Position numbers and translations under genes: made by a program. DNA of 64,000 nucleotides from Auanema rhodensis (lineage: Eukaryota > Animalia > Nematoda): NCBI GenBank assembly GCA_964057225.1, contig OZ059895.1, forward strand, positions 18,538,001 through 18,602,000, written 5' to 3'. The notes below the pieces were generated by a model. The model ran no database searches, was not told the DNA's origin, and worked only from the letters and a program-made list of their open reading frames with translations. Positions within the stretch are counted from its first letter, which is position 1; every line of letters starts with the position of its first letter. Positions 11,962 to 25,363 of the stretch are shown here, piece after piece.

Positions 11962-13975
11962 ATTTAAGTTAAAACAATGCTTTAAGCTATAAGTTTGTGT
12001 TTAATACGAATAAAAATGAAAAGTTAATATTGTCTTTATCCCTTTATAGGTGTTTAGTATCGTAGTTTTGATGAGAGAAAACTTGGAAGAATCAACTTTT
12101 GAGATCACGGCTGCTTGACATTCAACGTCCTATTCTCGGCATCAAAACTACAAAAAAATAGAGAACAAGAAGGATTTAGGAATAAGTGGCCATCTATCCG
12201 TTTAGAATCATATATTATTTCCTTTCTAAGAATATTCTCGAATAAATAGTATTTTCAATAGAAAGTTCAGCTATTAGTATTAGTATGTATAACATGATTC
12301 ATACAACATATTTCTAGAATGTTCTGCCTGGTTCTTCACAAAGAAATCAAAAATAATCTCATTTTCACGAAAGAGTATCAAAGTAAATGTTTGTAAGCGA
12401 GAAGATATAGATGTTACCATTGTTTTTGCCCTTTTTTTGTAGAAGAAGAACTTTTCTTTAGAAGAATTTCGGTACATCTTGTTTATAAAACAAATAACTG
12501 ACCGTTACATTCACGAAATAAACCATTCTCTTTAAGTTTGAAGTTATTGTCTTTAGTGTATCCATTTCAAATGATCCGTAACCTTCTATTATAGTTCTAT
12601 CAAATATCTCTTTTTCAAATCTACTAAGTAAATCATCACGTTTCTACTGTCTTTCAGGTTTTTTTTGTTCCGGTCACTCCATGAACAAACAGTTATCCAA
12701 ACAGTCCAAATCTTGTATTGACACGCTAAGAGAGACTTAGACTTTTGCTCTTGTAACATAAACTTTTGGATATTAGTATATTGTAAGTGTTGAAGAAAGT
12801 ATTTTATGTTAATAATCATCAAAATACATTAGAAATTTGGGTTAAAGTTCAGAAAGTGTTATTTCATCCACTTTTTCATCAGATATACAACAAGCGGCTT
12901 CATTGATTTAGTTTTCTAAAGAATTTTATTGCAAATACTATTTTCTTCTTCTTATATTATATCTTCAGATATTATATCTGTCCGGATGTTGAGCATATAT
13001 TCAAGACTAATTTGCCCTTACTCGTGAAGACAAGAGGCAAGTTTCTGCACTAAAAATCTGGTTCAGAACCTCGTTTTCGTCCCGCTCTCGCTGTACGTTC
13101 AAATGCTTGTAGTTGGTCACTTTTAACGGGAATTTTTTATTTTTTCTGTCTCTAGCTCTATGTTATTCAAAAACGAAGAGAGAAAATAGAGGTAATAAGG
13201 AGAGGAGATGGGCATCGGATGATTGAAAGAGTGGACAAGCTTCTTCAAGTGCTTCTTGGATTGTTCTCTCTTTGAGTCTAATCTTTAACAAACATTATTT
13301 GGAAGAAGAGGTAAGATAGTGAAAAATAAATGAGAGATATGTATGTAATATATGAAAATAGAGAGAAAAAAGAAAATAAGAAGAAGGAACAGAGAAAAAC
13401 ATTACACGAGAAACTCTCTTAAAGTCTCTTCTTCTTATTTTCAATTATGATGTATTGACCTATAAGAGGTAAAGATTGATTGACAATTCAACAGTCAAAT
13501 ACGATGTTGTTGATGATTATGATGATGATGTATTCAGATGTATCGTTCAGTTTAGGCGAGAGTTTATAACAACTACGACTATGTCCTGCTTTGAATATTG
13601 ATTGATCCTGCTTTTTTAATTTTTTTTATAAATATAATGTTAAATTATTAGTAAATTTATAAAATAAATATATAAATCAATCTTTAATCTTTCAATATTA
13701 CAATGAAATAATATATAAGTTTTATAGTTTCAATAAAAACCCGTATAATCAGTACAACTATATGTATATTTGAAACAACCAAAATGAATTATTTTCAGCT
13801 AAAATATGAAAATAACAGGTAATGAATTAATGTTTGTACATATGTGTGAAATAACAAACCGATTAGATGTCATTAAAGATTTTTTCGTGCATGTTTGTTT
13901 CAGGTTTTAAGCTCGTATTGTTGTGACATCACATAGAGAGGTGATATATGAGCTGAAAGGTAGTGGAAAAAAGAT

Positions 13976-13978
<3 letters not shown>

Positions 13979-14034
<56 letters not shown>
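13979..14034. repeat. (GA)28 microsatellite, part of the left arm of an inverted repeat
   Basis: Direct reading. Confidence 0.95.
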
Positions 14035-14038
<4 letters not shown>

Positions 14039-14121
14039 TCACAAAGAAGAGAAATTGCGACATTAGATGTTACATGAATGAAATCAACATCCTTATTTTG
14101 ATAGAAAAAATAATTTGGCGT

Positions 14122-16761
14122 TCAAATGGTTGGATTGTAGGCATGTAGTGTTGGCCCCTTGATTGTCGATATCTGGGCTGTCTGCTTACGTGACTGTTTT
14201 CGACGATAGCAGATGTAGGCTGATAGCAGAGACAGATTCAGACCTACGCACACAACAGCAATCACAATAGCTAAGCCCACAGCCCAGACGGGTGCCAATG
14301 AGTGAGGATCTGAGTATGGTGGTCGAATCGTCGAGTAGTCAGAAGATTCACTTGGATTCGGAGTTTCTTCCACCGATGTAGAAGTTGCTGCGGGTTGTAC
14401 GGAACTAGGTGGATTAGTTACAGCTTCCAGATCATTATGCTGCACTTGAACAACAGAAATCGGTGATATCTGAAAATAATATATATTTATAAAGTATAGT
14501 TAGGAATGTTTGTTGGTTTCTAAGAGGATTTTAACTTTTTTTGAGGATTTGCTCATTTTCTTTATTTTTCCTCAGTAATACAAGTATCTGCCTGCTCCCA
14601 AAGCGATGTATTTCTTTGCCATAAGGTAAGCCAATCAATTTTGACCATAATTGTCTCAGATACATCTAACTATATGCATATATGGTAGGCTCAGCTTAAT
14701 AGCTAACTTGATAAAAAATTTATTAGCTGTGCTCTTTGTCTGGCCGCATGTACCGCAAATCGGCACTACGCATAGACTTTCTTGTTTGGCTCTCTCAGAG
14801 CATTGTCCACTTGAGACTCATGGGATACGCGACAGGACGATGCAGCCATCATGTATCAGATGACCATTCATCTGGTTGCATGGCATATTGCTGTGATCAA
14901 TGAACTCACTCGGTAGTCGACATAGTTAAGTCGTGCGATATATAATGAATATGCCCAAGTAAAGCTATACGTTTGAGTCTTTCCGAAGTAATTGTACGAA
15001 ACTGACTTTATCCCCCCCCCCCCCCATCCGTTTCTCTGCTTTCACCGATATTTAGATATTCTTCTCCCAAAATATGGGATAGTATACCCTGGCTTAGGAT
15101 ATGCGTTATATCATATATGCATAAGTATACAAATAAGATTAAATATAAAATATATAGTATAGGTAGTAGCATATGCTATTTTAATAAGAGATAATGTATA
15201 GAATTTAATATTAGACATTTGTTATTTGAATTATAACAGAAGGTAGTATATGTCTAATAAAAAAAGAAAAGATGTTAATGTTAACTCTAAATTTGTATGC
15301 TAATTATTACTATATGTATAGTTAAATGGTTATATATTTATAATTCTTAAGATAATCATTGATTTGTTACCTTTTTTTTGGTTTAAAATACATGCAAATT
15401 AATCCTTTGATTACATATTTGAAAGACCTTCGAAACAAGCTAATTTTCATTTGAGCTAAATCCCACCTGTCATTCTGGAGTCAGAAGCATCAAACAATTC
15501 TGATTTGAAATAACCAAAAAAAATGTTTAATTGAATCGGATGATAATAGCAACCGTTTGTAAGACATTATGGAAAATAAATGAAGATTTAAGCTAAATTT
15601 ACACGTGAAAATTCACGTCAACTCTAATGACGCACGTTCATGTAAATACAATGGAAAGAATAAGTTTTAATCCCTTGTGTATATGTAAAATTATTATTTA
15701 TAATAACAAATTACATTTTATTAATTTCATAAAGAATAATTTTAAGAAAGTTTATACTTTATTATTAATTAATTTATTAAAATATTTAAAAAAAAGATTG
15801 AAACATTCTCATTACTTGCATCATTAATTTAATTCGATTTTCTTGACGTAAATTGAAATCTAAGTTCTAATTTAATATATTTTGAACTTTAAGTATATAA
15901 ATATTTTTGAAAATATTCTTATTCACCCCTTCTCACTCCCCCTCTCCCTCTTATAACTTAACTATACTATCTAACTATATGTATATATTGAATGAATAAA
16001 TGGCCATATATGTATGTATAAATAAACCTGTTAACGTTCAATCTGCTAAGCTGTACTCTCTGAACAGAAGGGTGAGATGACATGGCATATCGGTTAGCCT
16101 CAAAGCTCGACCCCATAATATCATTCAAGCATGTTATATAGGCAAATAAAAGCTTACAACACGGCTTATATCATATGGCTAAATCTGAATAAACGACTGC
16201 CGAATGACGGCTGATGATGATAATGAAATATTTACCAGTCTTTTTCGTCTCATTTTTCCGATAATTATGAGAAAAACAATCCAGAGATGCTTAGCAATGG
16301 TGGCTCACTAGTCAACAATATGATTAACCACATCTTGGAAGCATATTCGAGGTTTGACTAACTAACATTTTATTTTTAAGGTAAAATAATGGTCTACATC
16401 TACGAGTTGTTCAGTTACAAACGTAATTTTGTTTTAAATCAAATGCTTGAATAACATTGAGATGGCTTTTTGAATTCATTCGACCGAACATTGCTCAATG
16501 GCTGCCATGGTGACCTTCTTCCTTCGAGTAGAGAAATGGGCAACCATGGAGGTCAGCTTAGCATGAGCTAGTGGTGAACGATTAGCAAGTTGGCAATAGG
16601 TTGAAGACAGCAATGTTGTTGGATAAACATAAAGTTAGAGAGTGTTGGTTATAGGGAAGAAAAGAAAGTATGAAGAAACCATATAAGCTATACAAAGGTT
16701 GAATCATCTAATCCATAAAGATTCCTGTAACCTTTAATGTCGCAATTTCTCTTCTTTGTGA

Positions 16762-16844
<83 letters not shown>

Positions 16845-19800
16845 TTTCCTCAAAATTTCAATTGATTGACTCAATTTCTTATAATTGTATCCTGTAAAGC
16901 TAAACACAGAACACATAATGATCACATTTGTACAGAATATCAATGAAAAGAATGAAGATGACTAGTCGATGTTGAACGAAACGAAAACAAACATGTGTGT
17001 ATCGAAGTGCAGAAATTCACATTGATCTATGAGGATGTGAGGAAGCATAAAGTGGAGAACAGTAGATGACTGAATGATGCGTATTCATTCTCTCTTAACA
17101 TCGCCATCATCGATTTCAACAATCCTCTCAACTTTTTTTTTGTTTTTTTCTACAGAAGAATTGCAAAATTGTCCTTTTCAAGACTAATAAACATTGAATG
17201 GAGCTATAGTGTTCCGCGTGACAGGCAACTTCAAAGCCAACTTTTTCGCTTCGAGCGCGTAAAAAAAGGTTTCGTTTGCTAGCTTTTCAACACTTTTTTC
17301 ATCTTCATCCCTCAGGTGGTCAGAGAAAAAAAGAAGATATTTTGCTATTCACAATTATTTATCTCAGATATTGGGAAATATTTAGACCAGCAAGCAAAAG
17401 CTACTGAGCAAAATAGGTTTTTGGTTCAAAGATAGTTCTTCTTTCATCATATTCCCAAAATCTACCAATATATCCATTCGTTATCAGCTGTTTGTGTAGT
17501 CAAACTTTTCTTCAAATCCTATCATCGACTTACCGTTGTTGTGGACTGATTTCTGGATAACGTCACGGATATCAAGCCTTCAGCATCGTTAACTCGGTCA
17601 GTCAGACTGCACAAGGTTTCTGGTGATGGTGTGCCAGAGTGTCGACATCCGACTAACAGACAGTTTGGCTCTTCGTCTGCACGAGCTTCAAAAATTCCCG
17701 TAAAAGTGACACCATCACAATCTGAAATGATATTATATAAACTAGGTGAGGGGTATAATGATAGTGTTTCATCATACAACTTGGCAGCTCAATCTTTGCT
17801 CTTCAACAATGCCAACCAGCTTTCTCTCAAATGTTGAAAGCTTATTATACCGAGAGCAAGCCAATTATCAAAATAGAGAGAGAGAGAGATAGAGAAAGAA
17901 TGAGGTGAAGGGAGTTAGTTAGGAAAGCGCTAGATGGATGATAATAGGTTGTCTTGAGAACTGCAGTTTTGCCTAATAAAGGTTCAATTTGGGACAAGGT
18001 ATATACAAGGATTGAGAGAGGTTAACCATAATGAAAAAGATCTTGTGAGATAGTACATGCTATATGGAGATATGTGAGAGAAACGTAGTATAATCGACAA
18101 CATGCGGTTTTGAAATGAATTCGAATGACAGATTGGTGTTTCGTTTCGTGCTAGTAGCCAGAACTCATCTCAATGATTCAGAGATAGATTTCTAGAACAC
18201 AGTTCAGACAATACAATCGTAATTGATCATGAATAGGCACATAGGACTAGTAATAGATGTGAAGTGAAGTGAGAGATGAAAGACACGGGAGTTAGTAAGG
18301 CAAATCGAGAGAGTTTTACGTGAAGATTGCATGGATAAAGGAAAAGGTAAAATGAAAAATATGTCTTTAAGATGGGTGAAGAAAGAAAGAAAGATCAAGT
18401 TATGATTAAAAGAGAAAGTGAATGGATTGATATATACAGAGAGGGAGAGATCGACACTTGATCCACTGTACGAGGTTATCGGTGATATATATCGTCGGCT
18501 AGTAGAATACAAAAAAAAGTTTTTTTTGGTTTCTGTTGATATCTTTTTCTTTTTTGCCACTTGGATTATCATATAGCAGTTGCAGGTAGCTTGGACAGAA
18601 TTGAAAAGCAGAAAAAATCTTTTTTTCGAAGTACAAAAGGAATTATACGACGTGGTTGCCATGGTAACAATAGCACAAAGATTTGTTTCACATAGTTAAG
18701 ACATTATAATAAAAGAAAAAAAGCTGCTTTATAATATTACTTCATAATTTGTGATGAAAATGCTGCAGAATCCGCTGGTAAACATAGATAAAGAGGCTCA
18801 TACCAGAAGGAAGCACTGTTTCATCAGAAATGAGATGCAATAAAAATAAAAAAATATATGAATACTATTGAATATTTTTATAAAATTGAAAAAAGAAATC
18901 AAATTTGAAACATAAAATATAATGTTTTCATAATATTCTCATTGAATCCCTGGCTTTATATTGTGTTATCTCTCTTAAAAGAGTGAGAAAAATGATTCAA
19001 ATATGCTTGTAAAGCTAGCATTTGATCAGCTTAGTCTCATAATATTCCTTATGATTATTAGGTTTTTTGTTTTTTTTTTTTTTTTGGTTGCTTCTATTTA
19101 ATGCTTTGTGATGAAAAACGATAAAGTGAGAAAAAAGGAAAAAAGGAGAGAAAGAGATAGAGATAGATATATAGATAGAGAGAGGGAAGATAGGAAGAGA
19201 GGGAGGAAGAGAGGGAGAGAAGGAATGTATATCTCTGTTAACGTAAATTTCGAATAATATTTGAAAAAAATATTCAAGTAAATGAAATAAACAGACAACG
19301 ACATCAAACATTTCCGCTTATTGGGATGTCATCGGAGGTTGTTGAATTTTTGTTTCTTGAAATCTGAGACGTCAAATCCGACGACGTGAACGATGTCATC
19401 AACGGAGAAATGTAGTTACTGAACTGATGATGACTACAACGCCGACAACGGCGACGACTACATCTTGCATCATCTACCTCATCGTCAAGTTGTAAATTAC
19501 ACGTGTAGCAAGACATATAAGCTTTTAAGTAAATGCAAATCAAGTTTGATTGACGAACGATAAACCATGAAATAGAGACAAATTGGTAAGGATGAAGGAT
19601 AGTTAGGCGGGAAACAAGTTTTTGAACGTTTTTTCTGTTTGGGGAAAGAAAATTATATAAGGCAACAGTGAATAATATACATTGAGATCAGAATACGGAA
19701 GCTGTTGAGGAGAGTGAGGAGAAGAACATGAGAGACGGCTTGTTATAGAGAAGATTACGACAAGCGACAATCAAGAAAATTGGTGTTACGATGAAGAATA

Positions 19801-21322: not shown

Positions 21323-22546
21323 TTATTTGTATTTTGTGTGATTTTCAGTTGATATCTCAAGTATTTTCTGTATATTCTGATCATTTTTTGTATATTTAGT
21401 ATTGTATAGATGAGTTAAACGATGAAGAAATATTGAATAGATTGGATATAACTTGGCTATATTCTCCAAAAATGCTTGACTAGATTCAGGAGATGAGGAT
21501 GTGATTGATGATAGTACGTTTTCGGAAAAAAAAGTGGAAATGGATATTGATGAAGAAGGAGGAGGAGAAGACGATGAAGAAGATGATGTTAAAGATGGAA
21601 AGGCGAGAAGATCAGAAGCATGTTGCACCTTTTTAGAAGTTTTATTAGCAATTGAGATTTTGAAGTACTTTGATCGCCGTCCAAATCGGGAATCTGAAAA
21701 ATCATTTTATTGATATATGGATAGCTCTTGTGCTTTTTCTATCATCTTTATCGTTTATTTGATGAAAAATAGAAGTTTTTCATAGAAAAAAAGAAAAATG
21801 CTGAATGGTATCAGAATGGATTTGTAGAAAATGCTGAGAAAAAGTTTGAAAAGTTGCAACTTACTTGTAGGTGACATGCCAACATCCAAACAAGCATGAA
21901 ATCGACAAAACTTACAAGATGTACGATTACTTCCCTGAAATTCAAAAAAAAATTAAGAAAAGAAAAAGTAATTCAAGTTATCTTGCCTTAACATTACATT
22001 GACGATTGTTTTTACATTCAAACTTCTCACTTGCTTTCTTCATAATGGTTCTTCCGAAAAAAGACTGAAAAAGCCTTTAATACAATTGGAAAACAACAAT
22101 AATTGAGTCTCATAACGATTTTAATTAATTTTTCTATAAAAAAATAAACAAAAACAATGTTTTGAAAATGATCATCAACCGGTTTGTAATCACATTTGCA
22201 TATGAATGTGAAAAGGTTTCCACACTTTATTCATAACGTGATATGGAATTGAGAGAAACCAGAAGAACAAGTTGAAAATCATGCTGATTTAGGCTTAAGC
22301 TTTGATATTTTTACTGTGGATTAGTAAAAAAAAACAACTTCTAACAAACCTTACAGCCTTCACAAGTGAATGCTCCGAAATGAAAGCCACGTGCTGGTTC
22401 ATCACATACAGCACAGTTGAATAGAGTCTAAAAGGACATATAAGATAATAATCAATAAATAGTTAAGATTATGCTATTTAGCTGGTTGTGATGCTAATGA
22501 TTAGGAGAGCAATACCATATCATACCTGGTTATGCGGTAATGGCAT
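21323..22546 (-). CDS. Knirps/eagle-like (NR0A) nuclear receptor, DNA-binding domain only, about 205 aa; exons 22546-22526, 22427-22350, 22064-21987, 21934-21865, 21693-21323
   Basis: [95 protein letters not shown]...; two C4 zinc fingers, knirps-type FFGR and kni-box; all phases close. Confidence 0.9.
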
Positions 22547-24025
22547 GATGAATAACGTTTGCTTATAATCAGAAAATTGTTCCGGATGAACTGTCTGATG
22601 CTGCTACTGCTGAAGAGGCTGTCAGGTGGAAATTGACAATTTTCATGAACTGATCATCATCATTGACGTCGTTGTCATCGTCGTTGTCGTGGTCGTCGCC
22701 AGCATCTACGGAGGTTTGCCCAGATAATCTTCTGGCCCATTAAGCACTAAAGGCCTATACCGTATTCTATCTATCCGTTATGCCATTGAATGAATGAGAC
22801 AAATCAGTTACAAGAACACATTTACACGAAAAGAATTGAAAAATGAAAAGAGAAAAAACTTTTTTTTCCGCCTAAACGTCAAGTTTCTTCATTGGCACAT
22901 GATGTAATGAAAGTACATTTGTGAGTATTATAACATCAAATTTCATCAAATGTATACTATACTATACTATATCATATGATAAATTAAATAATTTTATAAA
23001 AATTTGGGATAATTAGTATATAAAACTTTTTTTTTTCAAAATTTTCATTTTTTCTGTTCATAATTATGTTTGAAATTTACTTTTTCACAAACACTAGTGG
23101 ATAGTATGTTGAAAATATCGAATTCATTTATAATCAAGTTTATTATTGAAACTTAAACTTGAATAAAGAATATATGATAAAATTCTTTTTAGAATATTGA
23201 TATCAAAGTTTTTAAATAATTAGTATTACTTGTATTATGCCCCATTATACAGTTGATCGTTGATCAACAAAGATTTTTCCAGTAGAAAAAGGAAGTAAAA
23301 TCAAAATAAATTTTATGAATTTCAAATTATGGTGAGGATGAAGGTCATACAAATTTGTATCAAGTATTAGTTTTTGAAGTGAAGTCAACGAAGAAACATC
23401 TCGCAAACGTCATCTCATCTCACAGCAGGTGATCACATTCATCACACCTTCATTGAACCTCCATGACTTAGTTCAAGTATTTTCAAATGTTACAACATGA
23501 AGATTATCATCAAATGAGATTACGTTGCTTGAATATTTGATTCAAAGCTCAAAGATATGAACTAAAAGTTACTGAAAGCTATATGTAAAGCATGATACTA
23601 ATATAAAGGAATTGAGTTCTTCGAATGCCATTACGATGTTTGACGCTGTAAAACGCATGAATGAAAGTGTGAGGCCAAGACCTAAATTTTTAGCAGAAAT
23701 TATCGTTGAAAGAGAAGGATAATAGTTGAACGACCAAACCATATTTCACCTTTTTTTCTAATATATTCAATGTAATTGATAAACGTTTTTGGAGCATGAA
23801 TTAGATAATAAAAGATCAAATGAAGCAGTTTAAATTGGTTTCACTCTTCATTCGAGAGTCAGAAGCTTTAAAAAGTCGAGTTTATAGTGATTATACATTA
23901 GGTTTATGTGTTTTGTTACGAGCTAACAGCTATAGATATGAAGATAAAACTGTGTTTTGCATGCTCTCCTTCCCAATACACGACTGATAATGACCCGGAT
24001 ATCACACAGGAATATAAAAAAGAGT

Positions 24026-24026
24026 A

Positions 24027-24082
<56 letters not shown>

Positions 24083-24091
24083 AAGAGAGAG
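24026..24091. repeat. Imperfect (GA)n microsatellite
   Basis: Direct reading. Confidence 0.9.
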
Positions 24092-24212
24092 AAAACGGTA
24101 GAGATTTTTTTCTTGTATCTTAGAAGTTTAAATGGCTTTTTTCGAAAACACTTGGTAAGCAGTAAATATATTTATAGACTGTAAACTGTACATGAATTAT
24201 GTTCTATTCATA

Positions 24213-25363
24213 TCAACGACATCCGGCAGCTCCCCAGGCGCTGACGTCACGGAAGTAAATGCTGTGATCAGCAGTAGAGGTGTCAATCTTTCCATCAGAG
24301 CATCCAATGTTTTCATCTCCACGGCAAACCTTGTAAGTTGGGGTAGACATGTCATTGTTGTAGTAAATCTATAAAGATCATGCTGTTACTACAATTCAAT
24401 TATGCAATGTTCATACCTCGGTATGATGATGGTGGTAGTTCTCGACATGGTTGGGTGGAAGATGTGGAACAACATCATGAGCATGGATGACACGGAAAGC
24501 ATAAGCGATCTATATACATGTGTGATTAAATTGAATTGAACATCACAGATTCTAACCTCCTTGTCAACGCTTTCAGAGAAGACGCGATCTCCGGTACGTG
24601 GCTGTCCGAAGGTAACAAGACGAACCTTGTCGGCGGGAACGAGCTTAGTGTGGACGATGTAACTGGCAGCCAAAGAAGCCATGGCTCCTCCGAGAGAGTG
24701 TCCGGCAACCTATTATATGTTGAAATAGAAACACATGATAATCAAAATATTTTCATACCCAAACGCTGTAGTTTGCGTACTTGTTCTTGAGTTGATTGAA
24801 GTCATCCTTCATACCGTGCTTCCAGACAGAGAAGAAACCGTCGTTGAAATACTTGGAAACGGCACCTCCAGCAACCCAAGCGGTCTGAACACATTTTTAC
24901 ATTCTAAAATAAAGATTTTCAGAAATTTTACATGGTTAGAGAAGATAGATTCCTCAGATTCCAAAAGAAGTTGAGCTACTCCTTGAGTTCCCCTGCAAAT
25001 TACGGTGATAATTTGATGGAAATGAAATCATGATTTATACTTGAATGCAAGAACAATAGCTTGTTCTTGATGAAGAGCAGCAGCATATCCGATGCACTTA
25101 TCAATGAAATAAGGAGAACAGATGGTCTTGTAACGACGCTTGAACTGAAATCACGCACTACATGTCAACGTTATGACAGTCTTGCCTACCTCAACTTGAG
25201 CAAAGTTGTTCTTCAAGCATACATCTGGATGATCGTTATCAGTAGCAGCACAGATAGGCAGAATCTTGTTTCTGGCAAAGCTGTCGTCATACAGACTCTT
25301 GGCAGCATCGAATGGCATGGCATTAGCCAAGGCGGCCAGTAAAACTAAGCCAACGACCTTCAT
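24213..25363 (-). CDS. Secreted class 3 (fungal-type) lipase, 7 exons
   Basis: Signal peptide MKVVGLVLLAALANA; IVLAFKGT; nucleophile motif GHSLGG; TFGQPRTGD; RVIHAHDVVPHLP; DHSIYF; ends GAAGCR*. Confidence 0.92.

What the first reader, a model, noticed from the sequence alone, without database searches (positions are those of the whole stretch)
21323..22546. Cryptic knirps/eagle-family (NR0A) nuclear receptor in a nematode
Seen: five small exons, with the zinc fingers invisible to the ORF track, splice in frame to ...[34 protein letters not shown]...ECKNNRQC...[34 protein letters not shown], then a Ser-rich tail and a stop with no ligand-binding domain. Known (recalled): Drosophila Knirps begins [32 protein letters not shown]...NRTTCKACRLRKC..VGMSKGGSRYGRRSNWFKI. 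FFGR (most receptors have FFRR or FFKR), the kni-box and loss of the LBD are diagnostic. The family is mainly described from arthropods, and I know of no such gene in C. elegans, whose LBD-less ODR-7 has a different P-box. Inference: an ancient ecdysozoan gap-gene-family regulator retained here and lost in C. elegans. Its nematode-style introns argue against contamination. No PxDLS CtBP motif is visible, so it may repress differently.
Basis: partly seen in the sequence, partly recalled or inferred. Interest (0 to 1): 0.85.

Follow-up and report, generated by a model that had tools for sequence, protein, structure and literature searches.

The report
Knirps-family nuclear receptor gene in a nematode
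This is a real, intact five-exon gene for a small DNA-binding protein of the Knirps/Knirps-related/Eagle family (a nuclear receptor with no hormone-binding half); close copies exist in many other nematodes but none turned up in Caenorhabditis, and no paper found here describes them.

Summary
Five minus-strand exons (22546-21323) splice in frame to a 205-aa protein. It has a complete nuclear-receptor zinc-finger domain, the Kni-type signature [18 protein letters not shown] and a kni-box-like [12 protein letters not shown]. It has no ligand-binding domain.

Orthologues were recovered from clade III, IV and V nematodes. All are 184-231 aa when modelled cleanly, and Pfam finds only zf-C4 in them. 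Every other top database hit is an arthropod or tardigrade knirps / knirps-related / embryonic-gonad protein, at 64-68% identity over 84 ungapped residues. No Caenorhabditis or Pristionchus protein appeared.

In trees the Kni-like group separates from the available outgroups (100/98). The nematodes form one clade (100/99). The window is sister to Auanema sp. JU1783 (99/89).

Three of the four intron positions and phases are shared with a tardigrade kni-like gene. The tail is coding: the frame stays open (p about 0.001-0.002) and carries a C-terminal hydrophobic motif conserved in clade V.

Public records already call nematode orthologues 'Knirps-related protein' (Dirofilaria) and 'Protein embryonic gonad' (Toxocara). 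I found no paper describing them.

Expression in this genome could not be tested.

The parts
22526..22546 (-). Exon 1: ATG and 7 codons (MPLPHNQ). The A/B domain is nearly absent, as in arthropod Kni proteins (MNQ-x-C).
   Evidence: Donor is CAG|gtatga. The intron sits 4 residues before the first Cys, phase 0, the same position as in Auanema and the tardigrade kni-like gene. The start codon is inferred, not shown.
22350..22427 (-). Exon 2: first zinc finger, with the P-box and the start of the recognition helix ([22 protein letters not shown]).
   Evidence: Pfam zf-C4 E=2.7e-8, profile 2-24. It scores 36-37 bits against arthropod kni-likes and 28.5 bits against the best PDB receptor.
21987..22064 (-). 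Exon 3: SFFGR, the inter-finger linker and the D-box (CKNNRQC). It ends at a GC donor (21986-21985).
   Evidence: zf-C4 profile 25-48. No PDB receptor matches at E<=10. The intron [10 protein letters not shown], phase 0, is shared with Auanema, Brugia, tardigrade and Apis knrl.
21865..21934 (-). Exon 4: second half of finger 2 and the start of the C-terminal extension ([23 protein letters not shown]).
   Evidence: zf-C4 E=3.5e-6, profile 50-69. The phase-1 intron directly before SR[FY]GRR is shared with tardigrade and Brugia.
21323..21693 (-). Exon 5: kni-box core, Ser/Pro-rich tail, conserved C-terminal motif, and stop TAA with an overlapping AATAAA.
   Evidence: Brugia and the strongylid transcript also carry the kni-box-to-stop stretch as one uninterrupted coding piece.
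21656..21691 (-). kni-box core [12 protein letters not shown].
   Evidence: SR[FY]GRRS[KR]YFK[IV] is invariant in all nematode orthologues. Over the 19-aa box, 10/19 residues match the arthropod consensus.
21404..21451 (-). Conserved C-terminal hydrophobic motif LYPIYSIFLHRLTHLY; candidate co-repressor docking site.
   Evidence: It aligns in frame with Auanema IYPLYSIILNRFLQFY and strongylid IYPFFISNLLRIY / FYPFFLTQLLHLY. Function is inferred.

Best explanation
The locus is a functional nematode orthologue of the ecdysozoan Knirps/Knirps-related/Eagle family, the 'NR0A' Kni group. It encodes a 205-aa transcription factor made of a nuclear-receptor zinc-finger DNA-binding domain at the extreme N-terminus, a kni-box-type C-terminal extension, and a short low-complexity tail. 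It has no ligand-binding domain.

The P-box and recognition helix ([10 protein letters not shown]) are identical to those of arthropod Kni. I therefore infer that it binds Kni-type sites without a ligand and acts through short linear motifs in its tail, most probably as a repressor.

In this lineage (clade V) the CtBP-binding PxDLS motif of arthropod and clade III nematode orthologues is absent. The only conserved tail element is a hydrophobic C-terminal motif (21451-21404). It aligns with eh1-like (Groucho/UNC-37-type) motifs of relatives and is my candidate docking site.

Shown here: gene structure, family membership, absence of an LBD, purifying selection.

Inferred: DNA target, repressor activity, co-repressor partner, expression.
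For: - Structure and domain.
- Orthologues in clade III, IV and V nematodes show zf-C4 only.
- All other top hits are arthropod or tardigrade kni/knrl/eg. The window segment is 64-68% identical to them over 84 ungapped residues, 94% to Auanema and 75-76% to strongylids.
- 208 of the 234 retrieved proteins carry exactly [16 protein letters not shown].
- Bit-score gap of 114-120 (Kni-likes) against 71.7 or less (any solved NR family) with the same query.
- Trees: Kni-like clade 98/94 and 100/98, nematodes 100/99, window plus Auanema 99/89.
- Intron positions are shared with tardigrade, Apis and Brugia.
- Purifying selection against Auanema over 97 codons: pN 0.067, pS 0.83 (saturated).
- Tail ORF open beyond chance, with a conserved motif.
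- An LBD-less ORF sits on a spliced transcript contig of a strongylid.
- PLDLS in clade III, an eh1 pattern in Strongyloides and Steinernema, and PxDLS in 158/186 panarthropod homologues.
- PMDLS of Knirps recruits CtBP: PMC9890238.
Against: - No expression evidence for this genome.
- No protein identical or nearly identical to the window product is in the collection.
- One donor is GC.
- The start codon and the last 26 or so codons after the conserved motif are unsupported by conservation.
- The window's own C-terminal motif does not fit the eh1 pattern as I recalled it. Its role is a guess.
- The trees lack named NR1E, NR1J, NR2E, ODR-7 and C. elegans NHR references, because the spliced protein could not be sent to any search. 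Exclusion of those groups rests on hit ranking only.
Confidence: 0.88

Rival explanations
1. The true product is a fusion of the receptor DBD with the downstream PAN/apple-domain membrane protein, as public gene models have it in Auanema, Necator and Strongyloides ratti.
For: P0007, P0028 and P0153 are such fused models. A GT follows ...KTSKK in the window at the place where the Auanema model splices.
Against: On the strongylid transcript contig L002 the receptor ORF ends in a stop, and the PAN ORF follows about 240 nt later in another frame. The fused models join a nuclear DBD to a signal peptide. The read-through tails of the window and Auanema keep a conserved motif in frame. Clean models in eight or more species are 184-231 aa.
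Confidence: 0.04
2. It is an unexpressed or decaying gene copy (pseudogene) that merely looks intact.
For: No expression data were obtainable. There is a non-canonical GC donor. No matching protein is in the databases. A 25-codon uORF ends 23 nt before the ATG.
Against: All eight Cys, all splice sites and a 205-codon frame are intact. pN is 0.067 against saturated pS versus Auanema. Synteny (lipase - receptor - PAN gene) is kept. The tail frame is open beyond chance.
Confidence: 0.05
3. It is a canonical NR1-type receptor (Rev-erb/E75, E78, ROR/HR3 or PPAR-like) whose LBD exons were missed, or a nematode-specific HNF4-derived NHR that converged on Kni-like residues.
For: The second finger and the GMS-x4-RFGR extension resemble Rev-erb, ROR and PPAR, and exon 4 scores no better against Kni-likes (about 20-22 bits) than against PPAR-delta (20.3 bits). 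Named NR1E, NR1J and C. elegans references were not in the tree.
Against: There is a 45-bit gap in favour of Kni-likes over the whole DBD. The Kni-specific [18 protein letters not shown] is exact. No orthologue has an LBD and none lies downstream here. The only nematode non-Kni NHR in the set is 41% identical.
Confidence: 0.03

Closest known systems
Drosophila and arthropod Knirps, Knirps-related and Eagle/embryonic gonad (NR0A1-3)
   Same: DBD at the extreme N-terminus. Identical first-finger, P-box and helix string [18 protein letters not shown]. D-box begins CKN. NRTSCK in finger 2. The C-terminal extension keeps S-x3-SR[FY]GRRSxxFKI. No LBD. Low-complexity tail. The [10 protein letters not shown] intron is shared. 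Identity is 64-68% over 84 residues.
   Different: The second half of the kni-box (HCLLQE) is not kept (10/19 identical). There is no PxDLS motif. The protein is about half the length of typical arthropod members. It has its own C-terminal hydrophobic motif. Function in a non-segmented animal is unknown.
Nematode orthologues in public proteomes: Auanema sp. JU1783, Mesorhabditis, Ancylostoma, Necator, Cylicocyclus, Steinernema, Strongyloides, Rhabditophanes, Toxocara ('Protein embryonic gonad'), Ascaris, Brugia BM822, Onchocerca, Dirofilaria ('Knirps-related protein')
   Same: Same family. Same exon structure where checked (Auanema, Brugia). Same LBD-less build. The kni-box core is invariant. 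Clade V members share the C-terminal motif.
   Different: Clade III and IV members carry a 30-45-aa insert between the fingers. Their tails end in PLDLS or PLDLR (clade III, Steinernema) or FSIANIL (Strongyloides). Several public models are wrongly fused to the next gene.
Rev-erb/E75, ROR/HR3 and PPAR DBDs (NR1D/F/C)
   Same: These are the best-matching solved DBDs (67-72 bits). They share the GMS-x4-RFGR-x2-K extension at the same spacing. This fits the published placement of Knirps inside the NR1 clade (PMC2774871).
   Different: They have GFFRR instead of SFFGR and YGV instead of FGAF. They have an LBD and score 45 bits lower than Kni-likes.
C. elegans ODR-7 (NR0A4)
   Same: A nuclear receptor without an LBD.
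   Different: ODR-7 is placed in NR0A only for lacking an LBD and groups with NR4 (PMC2774871). It was not recovered among the hits here and was not compared directly.

Membership tests
Nuclear receptor superfamily (zf-C4 DBD) | Two C4 zinc fingers with C-X2-C-X13-C-X2-C ... C-X5-C-X9-C-X2-C spacing | tested here: met
   Pfam PF00105 hits exons 2-4 collinearly. The regex and alignment show all eight Cys.
Knirps/Knrl/Eagle group (NR0A1-3) | Kni-type first finger and recognition helix: [18 protein letters not shown] (P-box EGCKS, FFGR instead of FFRR/FFKR) | tested here: met
   The string is exact in the window. It is also exact in 208 of 234 retrieved proteins, all of them kni/knrl/eg-type or their nematode and tardigrade kin, and absent from the outgroup DBDs.
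Knirps/Knrl/Eagle group (NR0A1-3) | 19-aa kni-box directly after the zinc fingers | tested here: inconclusive
   10/19 residues match the arthropod consensus SKSGSRYGRRSNWFKIHCL. The core SRxGRRSxxFKI is kept but the HCL end is not. The GMS-x4-RFGR part also occurs in Rev-erb.
Knirps/Knrl/Eagle group (NR0A1-3) | No ligand-binding domain | tested here: met
   There is a stop after 205 codons. No Hormone_recep hit is found in the downstream ORF pieces. Orthologues show zf-C4 only. A spliced transcript of a relative ends without an LBD.
Knirps/Knrl/Eagle group (NR0A1-3) | DBD groups with Kni/Knrl/Eg rather than with other NR subfamilies | tested here: met
   All named non-nematode hits in the top 120 of two searches are arthropod or tardigrade proteins, most of them named kni/knrl/eg. 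Clade support is 98/94 and 100/98 against the available outgroups. There is a 45-bit gap over solved NR families. Limit: no named NR1E/NR1J/NR2E/ODR-7/C. elegans NHR rows were in the tree.
Knirps/Knrl/Eagle group (NR0A1-3) | PxDLS CtBP-binding motif in the tail | tested here: not met
   Absent from the window and from all clade V orthologues. Present in 158/186 panarthropod and 8/10 clade III nematode homologues. It is a common but not universal family feature.
Knirps/Knrl/Eagle group (NR0A1-3) | Acts as a short-range transcriptional repressor on Kni-type DNA sites | not testable with these tools
   Needs DNA-binding and reporter assays.

The most novel reading that the evidence does not exclude
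Nematodes kept the ancestral ecdysozoan Kni-type repressor but repeatedly exchanged its co-repressor docking motif. Clade III and Steinernema carry CtBP-type PLDLS/PLDLR. Steinernema also has, and Strongyloides ends in, a Groucho-type eh1 motif. Clade V, including this genome, has a new hydrophobic C-terminal motif. The gene was then lost on the branch to Caenorhabditis. In clades IV-V it also travels as a conserved gene pair, possibly an operon, with a PAN-domain membrane protein gene.
Probability: 0.3. Interest if true: 0.6.

Novelty: new member of a known kind. Interest (0 to 1): 0.5.

Why it matters
Published surveys treat the Kni group as an insect and crustacean family. PMC2774871 says it was previously known only from insects, and lists ODR-7 under NR0A for lack of an LBD only. 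C. elegans, the reference nematode, seems to lack the gene.

This locus, with its orthologues in clades III-V and in a tardigrade, shows that the family dates at least to the ecdysozoan ancestor and is widely kept in nematodes. That includes major human and livestock parasites (Brugia, Onchocerca, Ascaris, hookworms, Strongyloides).

It gives a small, ligand-independent regulator that cannot be studied in C. elegans but could be in Auanema, Steinernema or Strongyloides. It also offers a natural series for asking how a repressor changes its co-repressor.

It also flags wrong fused gene models in three public annotations.

Tried and rejected
1. Exon 5 as a query to the word-indexed protein search found nothing. 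This says only that no 70-222-aa protein shares that tail.

After that the spliced model was used only in local scripts, and all searches used exact window pieces or database proteins.

No RNA evidence was obtained.

4. Per-exon PDB searches show a nuclear receptor but cannot tell subfamilies apart. Exon 3 matches no solved receptor.

5. The ESM Atlas search gave only generic zf-C4 clusters.

6. The promoter/terminator scan uses bacterial consensus sequences and is irrelevant here.

7. An alternative GT donor two codons upstream in exon 3 was rejected because it would give C-X7-C.

8. The splice after ...KTSKK used by the Auanema model was rejected (see rival 1).

9. Eight literature searches found no description of a nematode kni-like gene. 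Rothe et al. 1989 (PMC401387) is not held, so the kni-box was defined from the arthropod hits and PMC2774871.

10. My exon mapper failed on Brugia. tblastn gave the exons instead.

Full report
**Observation**

The feature lies on the minus strand. Reading that strand in three frames and locating the junctions gives five exons: 22546-22526, 22427-22350, 22064-21987, 21934-21865 and 21693-21323. They join in frame to 205 codons. The stop TAA at 21325-21323 overlaps an AATAAA.

Acceptors are ttttag or tttcag. Three donors are GT and one is GC (AAG|gcaaga, after exon 3). Only the GC junction restores the obligatory C-X9-C spacing. The Val-Lys codons before it are kept in Auanema and Brugia.

Pfam zf-C4 hits exons 2, 3 and 4 at consecutive profile positions 2-24, 25-48 and 50-69.

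**Constraints on the searches**

I have no RNA evidence for this genome.
I did not send it anywhere else.
- I therefore searched with an exact window piece that covers exon 4 (window:21860-21952:-).
- That search returned P0007 (Auanema sp. JU1783), whose DBD plus kni-box is 94% identical to the window's. P0007 and an alignment of nematode orthologues then served as proxies.

**What it is**

With P0007 residues 1-110 as query, the best hits are nematode proteins. After them come only arthropod proteins named knirps, knirps-related or embryonic gonad. They score 114-120 bits at 65-69% identity, and Pfam finds zf-C4 alone in them.

The profile of eight nematode orthologues retrieved members from three nematode clades (one name):

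- Clade V: Auanema, two Mesorhabditis, Ancylostoma, Necator, Cylicocyclus.
- Clade IV: three Steinernema, three Strongyloides, Rhabditophanes.
- Clade III: Toxocara ('Protein embryonic gonad'), Ascaris, Brugia BM822, Onchocerca, Cercopithifilaria, Dirofilaria ('Knirps-related protein'), Acanthocheilonema, Gnathostoma.

Arthropods and the tardigrade Ramazzottius follow in the list. No Caenorhabditis or Pristionchus protein is among the best 120 of either search. Together the two searches cover lengths of 110-604 aa.

The same P0007 query against all solved structures peaks at 71.7 bits (Rev-erb). VDR, PPAR, ROR and TR come next. Kni-likes therefore lead every solved NR family by about 45 bits. 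The nearest other families are NR1, as published for Knirps (PMC2774871).

The window's own 84-residue DBD plus kni-box aligns without gaps to arthropod Kni-likes at 64-68% identity. It is 31-52% identical to the non-Kni DBDs in the set.

The string [16 protein letters not shown] is exact in 208 of the 234 retrieved proteins. The D-box start CKN and NRTSCK are also shared.

**Trees**

- IQ-TREE on the DBD region gives a Kni-like clade at 98/94.
- With the longest outgroup rows removed, this clade reaches 100/98, the nematodes are monophyletic at 100/99, and the window is sister to Auanema at 99/89.
- Outgroups were limited to what the searches had brought in: 2DBD receptors, one Ascaris NHR and a few unnamed receptors.
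- Named NR1E, NR1J, NR2E, ODR-7 and C. elegans NHR rows are missing. This is the main gap in the membership test.

**Gene structure as independent evidence**

- The window's four intron positions and phases are identical in Auanema. tblastn shows the same exon boundaries in Brugia.
- Three of the four recur in the tardigrade kni-like gene: 4 residues before the first Cys (phase 0), [10 protein letters not shown] (phase 0), and the codon before SR[FY]GRR (phase 1).
- The [10 protein letters not shown] intron is also in Apis knirps-related.
- From memory, the CEGCK| position is also used by TR and RAR genes. On its own it would speak for NR1 kinship rather than for Kni specifically.

**No LBD, and the tail is coding**

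- The 110 codons after FKI stay open in only 0.08-0.22% of shuffles. The other two frames hold 3 and 10 stops.
- The read-through frame in Auanema, and the annotated tails of strongylids and Mesorhabditis, align with the window at a hydrophobic motif near the C-terminus: window LYPIYSIFLHRLTHLY (21451-21404), Auanema IYPLYSIILNRFLQFY, Cylicocyclus IYPFFISNLLRIY.
- Clean orthologue models are 184-231 aa.
- Pfam finds no Hormone_recep in ten orthologues. It finds none in the ORF pieces between the stop and the next gene either.
- A Logan contig of a strongylid (L002, 1974 nt) carries the whole receptor ORF uninterrupted, that is, spliced, and ending in a stop.
- Against Auanema, 97 codons show pN 0.067 with saturated pS 0.83. 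The gene is under purifying selection and is not a relic.

**Neighbours**

Downstream on the same strand lies a PAN/apple-domain single-pass membrane protein gene (exons at about 20084-19758, 17728-17534 and 14406-14125). Upstream lies a class-3 lipase. The order is the same in Auanema.

Public models in Auanema, Necator and S. ratti fuse the receptor to the PAN gene. On L002 the two ORFs are separate. They lie in different frames, about 240 nt apart. I read the fusions as annotation artefacts and the pair as a possible operon. This is not tested.

**How it probably works**

The P-box and recognition helix are identical to Kni. The protein is little more than a DBD with a tail. I infer a ligand-independent DNA-binding regulator that acts through tail motifs.

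Knirps recruits CtBP through PMDLS (PMC9890238). The distribution of tail motifs is as follows:

- PxDLS is present in 158/186 panarthropod homologues.
- PLDLS sits at the C-terminus in clade III nematodes.
- Strongyloides ends in LFSIANILN, which closely resembles the Engrailed eh1 example LAFSISNILSD quoted in PMC9890238.
- Clade V, including the window, has no PxDLS and only the hydrophobic motif.
- That motif fits the eh1 pattern in Cylicocyclus but not in the window itself.

Repression through this motif, perhaps via UNC-37/Groucho, is therefore a hypothesis. I put it at about 40%.

**Novelty**

The family and the architecture are known. Nematode members are already in public proteomes, two with knirps or eg names.

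I found no paper describing them in eight full-text searches. Reviews list the Kni group for insects and crustaceans only.

No protein matching the window's product closely is in the collection. The gene may be unannotated here, or this genome's proteome may not be held.

I rate it a new member of a known kind. It has moderate interest, for three reasons: the apparent loss in Caenorhabditis, the motif turnover in the tail, and the conserved gene pair.

**Uncertain points**

- The start codon is uncertain. A 25-codon uORF ends 23 nt upstream.
- The last 26 or so codons after the conserved motif are uncertain.
- Expression is untested.
- 'Loss' in C. elegans rests on absence from ranked hit lists, not on a genome scan.

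Noticed in passing
window 20084-14125 (-), with L001, L002, P0007, P0028, P0153: A PAN/apple-domain single-pass membrane protein gene follows the receptor on the same strand. The pair is conserved in Auanema, a strongylid, Necator and Strongyloides ratti. Three public gene models fuse the two genes. One spliced transcript contig carries both ORFs in different frames about 240 nt apart. This is an operon candidate and an annotation artefact.
   Followed up: partly
window 24389-24682 (-): A class-3 lipase exon (Pfam Lipase_3, E=4.9e-10) lies upstream of the receptor. The same neighbour occurs in Auanema L001, so the order lipase - receptor - PAN gene is syntenic.
   Followed up: partly
P0151, P0157, P0149, P0150, P0155, P0031, P0040, P0023, P0144: Tail motifs differ by nematode clade. 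Clade III ends in PLDLS. Steinernema has an eh1-type DFSV(K/R)SLIG plus a C-terminal PLDLR. Strongyloides ends in FSIANIL (eh1). Clade V has neither PxDLS nor a clear eh1.
   Followed up: partly
P0149-P0157, P0031, P0040, P0023, P0144-P0147: Clade III and IV orthologues carry a 30-45-residue insertion between the two zinc fingers. Clade V, including the window, keeps the 16-17-residue arthropod-like linker.
   Followed up: no
window 22572-22646 (-): A 25-codon upstream ORF (MKIVNFHLTASS...) in a G+C-richer stretch with GAC/GAT repeats ends 23 nt before the receptor's ATG. It may be 5' UTR, or part of an unrecognised first exon.
   Followed up: no
No reads were laid, and the stretch was not sent to any tool afterwards.
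   Followed up: no
window about 13930-14060, 16740-16890 and 24050-24110: GA/CT dinucleotide microsatellites, which read as (RE)n or (LS)n in ORF lists, recur in the introns and intergenic DNA around the PAN gene and the lipase.
   Followed up: no
P0030, P0013, P0014, P0016, P0018-P0020 (second DBDs): The second DBDs of two-DBD receptors (rotifer and unnamed) are the nearest non-Kni relatives of the window DBD in this set, at 48-52% identity.
   Followed up: no
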